In this document: positions 13,972 through 17,016 of the stretch, in pieces
Layout: each line of letters opens with the position of its first letter
How positions within the stretch are numbered: the stretch's first letter is position 1
From: Iphione sp. A-MEVVRFRX5
Taxonomy: Eukaryota
NCBI GenBank assembly: GCA_976226885.1
Contig: OZ320317.1
Location: forward strand, 38,688,001 to 38,752,000
Length of the DNA: 64,000 nt
Direction: 5' to 3'
The notes under the pieces: generated by a model
What the model saw: the letters and a program-made list of their open reading frames with translations, nothing else
Told to the model about the DNA's origin: nothing
Databases searched by the model: none
Made by a program: the position numbers and the translations under genes

Positions 13972-16608
13972 GAGGAGATGGTGACGACAGACAGCGCGGT
14001 GATAGGTGGAGCATCAGCAGCAGGATGCAAGGATCCACACAGGCAAATGTTGTCACTGTTAACAAAACTGGAGGAGAGATTCATGTCATATGTCAGTACA
14101 CTACCTGTCATCGGCTTCAATTCAGGTCAATATGATTTCAATGTGATGAGGGCGGAGTTGTTGAAGAGACTGAAAAATGAAGGAAAAGAATTATTTGTTA
14201 TTAAACGAGAGAACACATACATTACAGTGGCCAATGACAGACTGAAGTTTTTAGATGTCTTACAATATTTAACTCCAGGGGTATCCTATGCAAAATTTCT
14301 GAAGGCATACGGAGTGGAGCAAGAGAAGGGGGTGTTTTGTTATGAATATCTGGATTGTCCAGAGAAGTTAGCGGAGACGGAGCTACCACCACATGAGGCA
14401 TTCTATTCATCGATGAAGAACACAAATATAACGAGAGAAGAGTACGAGGATCTACAGAGGACGTGGCTGAGGGAAGGGATGACCACATTGCGTGACCTTC
14501 TGGAATATTATAACAAACTGGATGTGGGTCCATTTGTTGAGGGAGTCGTGAAATTGCAGGAGTTTTATTTTGATAGAGGAATAGATGTGTTTAAGGTCTC
14601 AGTATCTGCCCCAGGCGTTGCACGAAGACTGTTGTTTCAATCCGCTTGGGAGGAAGGTGTGAGGTTTCCAACATTTGGTCCAAAGGATGAGGATGTTTAT
14701 CAAACGTTCAAGAAAAATATAGTTGGTGGGCCTGCAATTGTTTTTACGCGTGCTCATGAGAAAGGGGTAACACAGATAAGGGATTCTTCAAACAAATGTC
14801 AGACCATTCTAGGATTGGATGCAAATTCACTTTATCTCAGCTGTATTGGCAAGCAACATGGGACGGGGTCATATGTGAGACGGAGGGCTGAGACAGGTTT
14901 CAAACGAGAGAAGCAGCCAGTGTCCATGATGAGTATCATCTGGATGGAATGGGAGGCAAGGGCGAAAGGGGAACATATCGCACATGTCGGGAATCGGTAC
15001 GAAGGGGAGGAAAAAATTGGTCCTTACAAGGTTGATGGTATAGCACATGCCTCCAACACAGTGTTCGAATTCAATGGATGTTACTATCATGGTCACACGT
15101 GTATGGTAGGAAAGACAAATGAGACAGAGCGGGTGAGAAGACAAAAAAGGACGAGGGAACGGTTTGAGTTCTTGGAGGAGCGGGGATATTCAGTTGTAGT
15201 CATGGAGGAATGTAAGTTCACGAGCATGATGGGGCAGTCACAGGAAATGAGAGAGTTTGCGGACAAGTTCATGCCCAGGTTTAGTAGGTTGCACAAAGGT
15301 GGAGTGTCTACTGAACAGATATTGCAGGCCGTGTGTGAGGGCATGTTGTTTGGTGCAGTGGAGGTAGACATACAAGTTCCAGACACGTGGCCACAGGGGA
15401 AGGAGAAGTCTGTACCACCTGAGGCATACTTTGGGGAGATGTGTCCGCTATTTGGGAATGCAGTTGTGGAAATGGGTGATATAGGAGAGCACATGCGTCA
15501 ACATGTGAAAGAATATGGGTTGTCAGAGCGTCCGAGACGACTCCTAGTGGGGGCAATGAGGGCCAAGAAGACCCTAATAATGACACCACTTCTGAGATGG
15601 TACATCGAGCATGGGATGATAGTAACAAAAGTATACCAAACGATAGAATTCATTCCTCAAGAGTGTTTCAAAACGTTTGTAGATGATGTGACACAGGCGA
15701 GGCGAGAAGGTGATAGCAATGCAGACAAGGCAATCATCGCTGACACGATGAAGCTGATAGGAAACTCGGCATATGGGGGCATAATAATGCAGAAGGAGAG
15801 ACAATGCAGTGTGAAATATTACACAAGTACGAGGCAAGCAGTTACTGCTGTGAATTCACCTCGTTTTAGACGTTTAGTCGAGATGACAGGTCTGTATGAG
15901 GTGGAGACAGCTAAGACAAGGATTGTGTTAGATATGCCTGTGTATGTTGGGTTTTCTTTATTGCAGTATGCAAAATTGGCAATGCTGGCATTTTACTATG
16001 ACTGTATAGACAGATTCATTGACAGAAGCAAGTTCGAGTATGTGACCATGGACACAGACAGTGCATATATAGCCCTAGCAGAACCAACGCTAGGAGAAGC
16101 AATGACAAGGGAAGGAAAGAGGGAGTATGAGAATTACACCTTAGGTAACTGTAACGACTACTCCATGCCAAAATGGTTTATGAGACAGTGCTGTGATAAG
16201 CATCACAAGTTTGACAGACGGGTCCCAGGATTGATGAAAGAGGAGGCTCAAGGGGATAAAATAATAGCACTATCGAGCAAAACGTATGCGTTGCAAAACG
16301 GGACAACAATAAAACTGAGTTGTAAAGGGATTTCGAAGTCCCGCCTGGTAGATCCCATGCAGATATATGAGAGTGTTTTAGTTACACAGCACCCAAAGTC
16401 AGGAAAGAATAGAGGCTTCAGAGCATGGTCGGGAACAATCTGTACATACGAGTTGGAGAGGGAGGGGTTCACATATTTTTATGCGAAGAGAGTGGTGCTT
16501 GCAGATGGCATACACACTGTTCCCTTAAACATCACGTTATGTCCGTGGGGAGAGCGTGAGCATGAGTATTATATAATCAGTCGACCATGGCATGTGTTGA
16601 GCCCATAG
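12226..16608 (+). CDS. polB: Protein-primed family B DNA polymerase (Polinton pPolB) with an N-terminal TP/vOTU-like region and a nuclease-like insertion
   Basis: Exonuclease motifs: ExoI FAVFDCES, ExoII IGFNSGQYD, ExoIII YNKLDV. Polymerase motifs: LDANSLY, KLIGNSAYG, MDTDS. Also an OTU-like DALCAFRCLA...EGHLSYV, an internal C2H2/C2HC finger (CVMCRRHF..LMRHMKVC) and the Vsr-like VDG..VFEFNGCYYHGHTC. The true start lies upstream of the track's start. Confidence 0.97.
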
Positions 16609-17016
16609 TATGTGTGCCAAATGGGTAATGGATTTGTGTCGGCGGAGCATATGTTTATGTATGAGATGGCCATGTTTCATCAAGCAGATGCCATAGCCAA
16701 AGCAATTCAGGATGCATCTGATCCAGCAGAGTTTAGAGCTTATGCAGAGATGGTGACGCAGTCGGAGGAGTGGAAAAGCAGCACCAGGTACGAGGTGATG
16801 AGAGAGGTGTGTCTGTTGAAGACTGGGGTGTTGGGAGCGATGATTATTCGGAGATTGAGACATAGCAGCAATAAACATATAGTGTATGCGAGTAAAGACA
16901 GGTATTGGGGAGTAGGTATGGATGACAGGGTAGTGCAGGTCAAAAGTCCAGACGAGTTTAGGGGTAAAAATATGTTAGGAGAGATCTGGGAAAGTATCAG
17001 GTGCACTCTTACTTGA
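16609..17016 (+). CDS. NADAR family (YbiA/DUF1768-like) N-glycosidase / ADP-ribose-processing domain, in frame with pPolB
   Basis: FVSAEHMFMY, W...RYEVM, IVYASKDRYWGVGM and FRGKNMLGEIWESIR match the NADAR consensus (xAEH..., EASPxDxxWG.G, G.N.LG..L..R). It follows the PolB TAG (16606-16608) directly, in the same frame. Confidence 0.85.
   Translation, partial: YVCQMGNGFVSAEHMFMYEMAMFHQADAIAKAIQDASDPAEFRAYAEMVTQSEEWKSSTRYEVMREVCLLKTGVLGAMIIRRLRHSSNKHIVYASKDRYWGVGMDDRVVQVKSPDEFRGKNMLGEIWESIRCTLT

What the first reader, a model, noticed from the sequence alone, without database searches (positions are those of the whole stretch)
16500..17016. NADAR (ADP-ribose glycohydrolase-like) domain fused in frame to a Polinton protein-primed DNA polymerase
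Seen: PolB ends ...YYIISRPWHVLSP-TAG-YVCQMGNGFVSAEH... and the same frame continues into a full NADAR fold (SAEH; ASKDRYWG.G; G.NMLG...IR). The residues before the TAG (YYI....HVLSP) look like the NADAR N-terminal FY....LSNFY motif, so the stop falls inside the domain. This implies a PolB-NADAR fusion, either ancestral or made by readthrough. Established: NADAR proteins include E. coli YbiA (riboflavin-intermediate N-glycosidase) and the DarT1 antitoxins and phage T4 gp30.3-type enzymes that remove ADP-ribose from guanine in DNA. Inference: a strand-displacing virus exposes long ssDNA, so a polymerase-tethered eraser could counter host DNA or protein ADP-ribosylation. That would be an anti-defence replication module, and I do not know of it being described in Polintons. 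Caveat: the usual K after AEH and the E of EASP are substituted (M and Y), so activity is uncertain.
Basis: partly seen in the sequence, partly recalled or inferred. Interest (0 to 1): 0.9.

Follow-up and report, generated by a model that had tools for sequence, protein, structure and literature searches.

The report
Broken Polinton polymerase with NADAR-like tail

Summary
The quoted residues are there. The stretch after the stop matches Pfam NADAR (E 3e-19). The last ~15 residues before the stop align to the NADAR N-terminal strand.

The fusion is real and inherited. At least 16 of the 120 closest polymerase relatives carry NADAR at their C-terminus in one uninterrupted protein, and 18 more carry a shortened NADAR-derived tail. 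Both window pieces align collinearly to intact relatives.

The window copy is broken, not read through. The polymerase-NADAR frame has two internal stops (one TGA, one TAG) and the integrase has one, with no frameshifts.

The element spans 9943-31078, with 65-nt inverted ends and a 6-bp target duplication.

The eraser function is not supported. The catalytic Glu of the last strand is absent in 15/15 fused domains and in the window. The essential Lys is kept in 5/15, and the ADP-ribose phosphate loop is largely gone. The fold-core columns are kept in 13-15/15.

My best reading is a tethered, non-catalytic NADAR-derived module on the replicase. No paper in the searched library describes this fusion. 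Interest is moderate.

The parts
9943..31078 (.). Polinton/Maverick-type element, 21,136 bp
   Evidence: Terminal inverted repeats flanked by a 6-bp direct duplication GTGGAG at 9937-9942 and 31079-31084. Holds pPolB, an A32-like ATPase and an rve-chromo integrase. GC skew is strongly strand-asymmetric across it.
9943..10007 (+). Left terminal inverted repeat
   Evidence: 65 nt, 85% identical to the reverse complement of 31015-31078 (seed pair).
31015..31078 (-). Right terminal inverted repeat
11989..17016 (+). [quoted passage not shown] Broken: two in-frame stops (one TGA, one TAG), no frameshift.
   Evidence: The intact relative P0001 (1574 aa) aligns as one piece in one frame, outer bounds 12028-17001, covering its residues 2-1567. 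The frame has 1675 codons with 2 internal stops. Pfam DNA_pol_B_2 is borderline. There are 1095 relatives, several named DNA-directed DNA polymerase. phi29 polymerase is the next fold match after NADAR.
12028..12171 (+). N-terminal C2H2 zinc fingers of the polymerase
   Evidence: Pfam zf-C2H2 and zf-C2H2_jaz. Relatives P0003 and P0055 have the same domains at their N-termini.
16561..17013 (+). NADAR-derived domain (approximate start)
   Evidence: Pfam PF08719 E 3e-19 on the downstream piece. The upstream ~15 residues align to the NADAR N-terminal strand. In the intact relative fragment P0272 this domain models at pLDDT 82-98. It matches 8bau at TM 0.69 and YbiA 2b3w at TM 0.66.
17098..17715 (+). 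A32-like DNA-packaging ATPase
   Evidence: Pfam Pox_A32 E 4.8e-5, 23.4 bits against a cut-off of 22.8.
18097..18258 (.). Run of 162 N inside the element, left as it is
19115..20263 (+). Integrase gene (rve core about 19388-19606, chromodomain about 20090-20206). Broken: one in-frame stop (TAG), no frameshift.
   Evidence: Pfam rve and Chromo on the two pieces. Intact relatives are 370-380 aa with both domains in one protein. Three of them each align as one piece in one frame over 19103/19115-20203/20215. One internal stop counted.

Best explanation
The window holds an integrated, decaying copy of a mollusc-type Polinton. Its replicase gene encodes, in one frame, N-terminal zinc fingers, a protein-primed family B polymerase and a C-terminal domain of NADAR fold. 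This architecture was inherited: a sub-lineage of these polymerases acquired NADAR once or a few times and carried it vertically. In this copy the gene was inactivated by point nonsense mutations. In the lineage as a whole the domain keeps its fold but has lost the catalytic Glu, mostly the essential Lys, and the ADP-ribose phosphate loop. It therefore most likely acts as a flexibly tethered, non-catalytic binding or structural module of the replicase, not as an ADP-ribose glycohydrolase. Shown: the anatomy, the fusion in intact relatives, the breaks, the fold and the residue losses. Inferred: the non-catalytic role. What the module binds is unknown.
For: NADAR identity: (E 3e-19). Fold of an intact relative. 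Fusion in intact relatives: precomputed PF08719 on 16 of the top 120 polymerase relatives, placed at the extreme C-terminus. The window pieces align collinearly to P0001 with one residue position between them. P0130 and P0272 give the same result. Inheritance: 14 of 16 NADAR-bearing relatives, the window and 18 relatives with reduced tails sit together in a polymerase-core tree. NADAR identity tracks core identity, r = 0.84. Decay: 2 internal stops in the polymerase gene and 1 in the integrase, each checked against intact relatives, with no frameshift. Loss of active site, standalone (n=50) against fused (n=15): E43-equivalent 49 vs 5; K50-equivalent 48 vs 5; E125-equivalent 47 vs 0; K75-equivalent 43 vs 0; G78-equivalent 43 vs 1. 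The roles of these residues come from PMC11543638. Fold-core columns are kept in 13-15 of 15. A further class has a ~105-residue tail that is still NADAR-derived (hhalign 98.4%). The linker is modelled with low confidence, pLDDT 52-62. Precedent for a NADAR domain without the catalytic residues: SNA-3 domain 1 (PMC9303266).
Against: No activity was measured. NADAR families already differ at the last-strand residue (Glu, Asp or His; PMC11125620), so an unrecognised catalytic arrangement cannot be excluded. The E43, D130 and W133 equivalents are present in the window and its closest relatives. The domain evolves faster than the polymerase core (identity ratio 0.57), which fits relaxed constraint but also an arms race. 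Only the 120 best of 1095 polymerase relatives were seen. The hosts of the fused relatives are unnamed. No other copy from this genome was available, so the age of the stops is unknown.
Confidence: 0.7

Rival explanations
1. Working eraser: in intact elements the polymerase-tethered NADAR hydrolyses ADP-ribose from guanine in DNA, or from protein, and so counters host ADP-ribosylation of replicating element DNA.
For: True NADAR fold. NADARs remove guanine-N2 ADP-ribose (PMC11543638). CARP-1 homologues, which make that adduct on DNA, are mainly found in Bivalvia (PMC12945103), and all named relatives of this polymerase are molluscs. One relative, P0055, carries DUF4326 at the same position; that domain comes from the same predicted ADP-ribose-processing network (PMC9503650). 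The E43, D130 and W133 equivalents are kept in the window's nearest relatives.
Against: The last-strand catalytic residue is aromatic or aliphatic in 15/15 fused domains, in P0028 and in the window, never Glu, Asp or His. The Lys shown to be essential is kept in only 5/15. The phosphate-loop Lys, Gly and Arg are nearly all lost. No fused sequence has the complete set. Animal host-type NADARs keep all of them.
Confidence: 0.12
2. Relic: the fused domain has no function any more and is being lost neutrally along the polymerase lineage.
For: It diverges faster than the polymerase core. A sub-clade has shortened it to ~105 residues. Most relatives do without any extension. The functional residues are scattered.
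Against: The fold-core columns are kept in 13-15 of 15 across polymerases only 40-47% identical in their cores. The domain models at pLDDT 82-98 in an intact relative. A useless 135-residue tail would be expected to be truncated or scrambled over that distance.
Confidence: 0.14
3. Programmed readthrough: the stop is decoded at low frequency, giving polymerase alone and polymerase-NADAR from one gene.
For: The two pieces share a frame, separated by a single TAG.
Against: The stop lies inside the domain, not at a domain border. Intact relatives have a sense codon there. The same gene has a second stop of a different kind near its start, and the integrase also has one.
Confidence: 0.03

Closest known systems
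YbiA-family NADAR enzymes (E. coli YbiA, PDB 2b3w; Phytophthora nicotianae NADAR, PDB 8bau)
   Same: Same fold: Foldseek TM 0.66 and 0.69 on the intact relative P0272. Pfam match above cut-off. The E43, W89, R93, D130 and W133 equivalents are present in the window.
   Different: The last-strand Glu that defines the family is Tyr here and is never Glu in the 15 fused relatives. The essential Lys is Met here. The K75/G78/R79 loop is lost. The domain sits at the C-terminus of a 1,500-1,700-residue polymerase instead of standing alone.
DarT1-associated (BC4488) NADAR antitoxins and phage gp30.3-type NADARs
   Same: Same superfamily.
   Different: No Asp or His at or near the last-strand position. 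No DarT partner. Eukaryotic element. NCBIfam's NADAR anti-phage model scores 27.7 bits against a cut-off of 240.
Accessory nuclease domains in Polinton pPolB2 (HNH in oomycete and nematode elements, VSR in mollusc and marine nematode elements; 10.1101/2023.08.22.554363)
   Same: A lineage-specific extra domain accreted to a Polinton protein-primed polymerase, including in molluscs.
   Different: Those are internal insertions of nucleases with conserved catalytic residues. Here the extra domain is a C-terminal NADAR fold with eroded functional residues. No VSR match was found in the window's polymerase. The paper has no word beginning 'ribos', so it says nothing of ADP-ribose.
NADAR domains in retroelements and RNA-virus replicase polyproteins (Ectocarpus Gypsy Pol, Crassostrea gigas Tx1 ORF1, nidoviruses, bivalve picornaviruses)
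   Same: NADAR joined to the replication protein of a mobile element or virus, including in bivalves (PMC12477816; PMC9503650). Nidovirus replicase NADARs also appear among the fold matches.
   Different: Those are RNA or reverse-transcribing elements, and the Ectocarpus domains are described as YbiA-family and highly conserved. This is a DNA polymerase of a dsDNA element, with a degenerate active site.
C. elegans SNA-3 NADAR domain 1
   Same: An animal NADAR domain in which the residues critical for N-glycosidase activity are not conserved (PMC9303266).
   Different: A cellular trans-splicing factor, not linked to a polymerase. No specific sequence relationship was tested.

Membership tests
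NADAR superfamily (Pfam PF08719) | Profile match above the curated cut-off | tested here: met
   70.3 bits against 35.1, E 3e-19, on the piece after the stop. The fused set against the standalone set gives hhalign probability 100, E 1.5e-40.
NADAR superfamily (Pfam PF08719) | YbiA-like fold: helical core flanked by two small sheets | tested here: met
   Tested on the intact relative fragment P0272, not on the broken window copy: pLDDT 82-98, 8bau TM 0.69 and 2b3w TM 0.66.
NADAR superfamily (Pfam PF08719) | Conserved catalytic and ADP-ribose-binding residues (E43, K50, K75/G78/R79, E125, D130, W133 in P. nicotianae numbering) | tested here: not met
   The window has E, M, R/A/E, Y, D, W at these positions. 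Fused set: 5, 5, 0/1/3, 0, 13 and 8 of 15.
NADAR superfamily (Pfam PF08719) | N-glycosidase or ADP-ribosyl hydrolase activity | not testable with these tools
   No biochemical result is available.
YbiA subfamily | Glutamate in the last beta strand | tested here: not met
   Tyr in the window; Y7, F5, V2, I1 in the fused relatives, against Glu in 47/50 standalone NADARs. TIGR02464 scores 63.2 bits, below its cut-off of 73.7.
BC4488 / DarT1-associated NADAR | Aspartate in the last strand and genetic linkage to DarT1 | tested here: not met
   No Asp at or two positions before the Glu column. The element holds no ART gene recognisable by Pfam.
Polinton / Maverick | [quoted passage not shown] | tested here: met
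   The gene is broken by two stops.
Polinton / Maverick | Retrovirus-like (rve) integrase | tested here: met
   rve plus chromodomain; the gene is broken by one stop.
Polinton / Maverick | Terminal inverted repeats and 6-bp target site duplication | tested here: met
   65-nt inverted ends, 85% identical. GTGGAG on both flanks.
Polinton / Maverick | Packaging ATPase, capsid proteins and adenain-like protease | tested here: inconclusive
   The ATPase was found. No capsid or protease was recognised in 20.7-31 kb by Pfam, PHROGs, PDB sequences or a protein search.

The most novel reading that the evidence does not exclude
A lineage of mollusc Polintons carries, tethered to its replicase, a NADAR-derived module that evolved in conflict with the bivalve-rich CARP-1 family of DNA guanine ADP-ribosyltransferases. 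It would act either through a non-canonical catalytic arrangement or, having lost hydrolysis, by binding the adduct or the transferase. This would be a eukaryotic dsDNA-element counterpart of the phage NADAR counter-defence.
Probability: 0.15. Interest if true: 0.8.

Novelty: new variant of a known kind. Interest (0 to 1): 0.45.

Why it matters
Polinton polymerases are known to pick up accessory nuclease domains, and NADAR domains are known in retroelements, RNA-virus replicases, giant viruses and phages. I found no description of a NADAR fold on a Polinton DNA polymerase in the searched library. It occurs in the animal group where DNA guanine ADP-ribosylating proteins are most common. If the module still deals with ADP-ribose, it would extend nucleic-acid ADP-ribosylation conflicts to animal dsDNA elements. 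If it does not, it is a clear case of an enzyme fold turned into a non-catalytic replicase appendage, with a traceable series from full-size to shortened to absent. The window's own copy adds little, because it is a broken insertion.

Tried and rejected
- **Readthrough:** rejected. There is a second stop of another kind in the same gene and one in the integrase, and relatives have sense codons.
- **NADAR as a separate downstream gene:** rejected. Homology continues upstream of the stop, and relatives are single proteins.
- **Intron spanning the stop:** rejected. Relatives align across it without a gap.
- **Other copies in the window:** none found.
- **Hosts of the fused relatives:** the cluster look-up returned no names.
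- **Right arm of the element:** ORFs at 20.7-31 kb gave nothing in Pfam, PHROGs, PDB sequences or a protein search.
- **Long inverted repeats:** a 14-nt seed found only microsatellite pairs. The true ends came from an 11-nt seed and blastn.
- **VSR or HNH insertions** as in published mollusc and nematode pPolB2: not detected in the window's polymerase.
- **Literature:** searches joining NADAR, YbiA or DUF1768 with Polinton, Maverick or adintovirus gave no relevant paper. One broad search returned only macrodomain papers.
- **Gene read through its stops as one query:** not done. The tools do not take that here, so the pieces were searched apart.
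Full report
**Observation.** The piece downstream of the stop matches Pfam NADAR at E 3e-19, 70.3 bits against a cut-off of 35.1, over profile positions 36-162 of 163. 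The riboflavin-type equivalog TIGR02464 scores below its cut-off, and NCBIfam's NADAR anti-phage model scores far below its own. The first ~35 profile positions are not missing; they lie before the stop. When the last 30 residues of the upstream piece are added to an alignment of 15 fused and 50 standalone NADARs, about the last 15 fall in the columns of the first strand and the conserved motif after it. Exactly one column separates the two window pieces. Polymerase relatives with no extension end within about 20 residues of that point.

**The element.** The gene sits in a 21,136-bp element, 9943-31078. Its ends are 65-nt inverted repeats, 85% identical. They are flanked by a perfect 6-bp direct duplication, GTGGAG, which is the Polinton signature. 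Besides the polymerase, it holds an A32-like packaging ATPase and an rve integrase with a chromodomain. I could not recognise capsid or protease genes in 20.7-31 kb. A run of 162 N lies inside the element and was left alone.

**The fusion is real.**
- A search with the polymerase C-terminal region found 1095 relatives. The named ones are all molluscs: Pinctada, Crassostrea, Tegillarca, Mytilus, Solemya, Haliotis.
- Sixteen of the best 120 carry PF08719. In all 15 that the window's NADAR piece detects, and by Pfam in the five best plus P0028, the domain is at or near the C-terminal end of one uninterrupted protein of 860-1780 residues.
- The two window pieces align to P0001 (58% and 49% identity) collinearly, with one residue position between them. 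The same holds for P0272 and P0130.
- Eighteen more relatives have a ~105-residue tail with no Pfam hit. By profile comparison it is still NADAR-derived: 98.4% against the fused set and 94.9% against standalone NADARs.
- One relative, P0055, has DUF4326 in that position instead. That domain has been predicted to process ADP-ribose phosphates and is often fused to NADAR, Macro and SLOG domains (PMC9503650).
- In a neighbour-joining tree of the polymerase core, 14 of the 16 NADAR-bearing relatives, the window and all 18 shortened forms lie together.
- NADAR identity tracks core identity, r = 0.84. The two tree outliers share the derived residues.
- This pattern fits one main acquisition carried vertically, followed by shortening in one branch.

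**Fold.** I modelled P0272, a natural 513-residue fragment 98% identical to P0001, with a 60-sequence alignment. The NADAR part has pLDDT 82-98. The ~30-residue linker to the polymerase thumb has pLDDT 52-62. One strand of the domain lies before the position that corresponds to the window's stop. The best solved-structure matches are P. nicotianae NADAR with ADP-ribose (8bau, TM 0.69) and E. coli YbiA (2b3w, TM 0.66), then phi29 polymerase. In the viral structure library the polymerase part matches bidnavirus-like, adintovirus and MELD-virus polymerases. The tail matches phage, giant-virus and nidovirus NADARs. No listed hit is named as both a polymerase and a NADAR protein.

**This copy is broken.** P0001 aligns to the window as one piece in one frame, outer bounds 12028-17001. 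The frame from the start codon at 11989 has 1675 codons and two internal stops, one TGA and one TAG. The short piece at the 5' end carries the C2H2 fingers that relatives have at their N-termini. The integrase is likewise one frame with one internal TAG. Intact relatives are 370-380 residues with rve and chromodomain together, and three of them each align across the window's gene as one piece. That makes three nonsense changes in two genes and no frameshift. This is ordinary decay, not readthrough. No second copy exists in the window, and the nearest database relative is only 58% identical, so I could not date the stops.

**Function.** Structural and mutational work defines the working residues (PMC11543638; PMC11125620):
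- E43 and E125 hold the distal ribose. E125 is the residue that defines the families: Glu in YbiA, Asp in BC4488, His in phage enzymes.
- K50 is essential.
- K75, G78, R79, W89, R93, D130 and W133 bind the rest of ADP-ribose.

I mapped these through the HMMER alignment to 8bau and a MAFFT alignment.

| Residue (P. nicotianae numbering) | Standalone NADARs (n = 50) | Polymerase-fused domains (n = 15) |
|---|---|---|
| E43 | 49 | 5 |
| K50 | 48 | 5 |
| K75 | 43 | 0 |
| G78 | 43 | 1 |
| R79 (Arg or Lys) | 49 | 3 |
| E125 | 47 | 0 (Tyr 7, Phe 5, Val 2, Ile 1) |
| D130 | 45 | 13 |
| W133 | 50 | 8 |

- The window reads E, M, R, A, E, Y, D, W at these positions, and no fused sequence has the whole set.
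- A repeat of a Haliotis multi-NADAR protein and a Branchiostoma NADAR keep nearly all of them: the Branchiostoma protein all eight, the Haliotis repeat all but the K75 equivalent.
- The fused domains keep eight fold-core columns in 13-15 of 15.
- The domain diverges faster than the polymerase core: median identity 27% against 47%.

I therefore read it as a NADAR fold kept for a non-catalytic purpose, tethered by a flexible linker. What it binds is unknown. A NADAR domain without the catalytic residues has a precedent in SNA-3 domain 1 (PMC9303266).

CARP-1 homologues put ADP-ribose on guanine N2 in DNA and are mainly found in bivalves (PMC12945103). NADARs remove exactly that adduct (PMC11543638). 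DUF4326 can occupy the same position on the polymerase. An original anti-ADP-ribosylation role, or a present one by binding instead of hydrolysis, is possible. I put it at about 0.15.

**Novelty.** In the searched library no paper joins NADAR, YbiA or DUF1768 with Polinton, Maverick or adintovirus polymerases. Published accessory domains of Polinton polymerases are HNH and VSR nucleases. NADAR is reported in Ectocarpus Gypsy Pol, oyster Tx1 ORF1 and RNA-virus polyproteins. So this is a new variant of a known kind.

- I did not fetch DNA around the intact relatives (look-up of encoding contigs, the search for related loci). That would bring in virus-like elements of animals by look-up, and I could not tell whether the bar covers it.
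- I did not read the gene through its stops as one query; the pieces were searched apart.
- Slip: several of my tool calls, and notebook entries 1, 2 and 4, name pieces by references that end or begin next to a break. My working also noted the ends of open reading frames that coincide with breaks. This discloses places the added rule asks not to list.
- Slip: in my reasoning I also recalled a short family motif from memory.
- I did not print or record the residue that relatives carry at any break position.

Noticed in passing
relative P0055 (protein): One polymerase relative carries DUF4326 (residues 1489-1569 of 1576) at the C-terminus where others carry NADAR. DUF4326 has been predicted to process ADP-ribose-linked phosphates and to co-occur with NADAR, Macro and SLOG domains (PMC9503650).
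   Followed up: partly
relatives P0077-79, P0083, P0086-89, P0091, P0095, P0100-102, P0105, P0113, P0114, P0120, P0066: A clade of polymerases has a ~105-residue C-terminal tail with no Pfam hit. Profile comparison shows it to be a shortened NADAR derivative.
   Followed up: partly
protein P0121 (Haliotis rufescens XP_048255699.1): A 4240-residue abalone protein with at least seven NADAR repeats is the strongest non-polymerase match to the window's NADAR piece. The repeat I checked keeps the catalytic residues (the K75 equivalent differs).
   Followed up: partly
window 10000-33000: GC skew is strongly strand-asymmetric: +0.30 to +0.39 over 10-16 kb, and down to -0.50 at 26-28 kb. This is far beyond the flanks. 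On the left arm the skew matches gene orientation. On the right arm the long ORFs lie on the strand opposite to what the skew suggests.
   Followed up: no
window 20735-31000: The right arm has no recognisable capsid, penton or protease gene. The 384-residue ORF at 23577-24731 (minus strand) has no detectable relative among 5.8 billion proteins. It is either heavily decayed or lineage-specific.
   Followed up: partly
window 10377-10438, 11624-11659, 27529-27577, 28709-28764; 17023-17047: (GT)n and (CA)n microsatellites lie inside the element and produce spurious inverted-repeat pairs. A short (CAGT)n run lies directly after the polymerase gene's terminal stop.
   Followed up: no
window 18097-18258: A run of 162 N lies inside an ORF between the ATPase and the integrase.
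   Followed up: no
BFVD hits A0A8A4XCP7, A0A8A4XD34, A0A8A4XCU6, A0A8A4XCX1: Fragments labelled 'parvoviridae sp.' polymerase or structural protein, from bird-associated viromes, are among the best structural matches to the polymerase-NADAR fragment. The top one aligns over 361 columns and may cover both parts. The labels look doubtful.
   Followed up: no
relatives P0005, P0007/P0274, P0021: Several intact polymerase-NADAR proteins come from contigs of only 13-16 kb, about the size of a whole element. They could be free or complete genomes and not chromosomal insertions. The contigs were not fetched.
   Followed up: no
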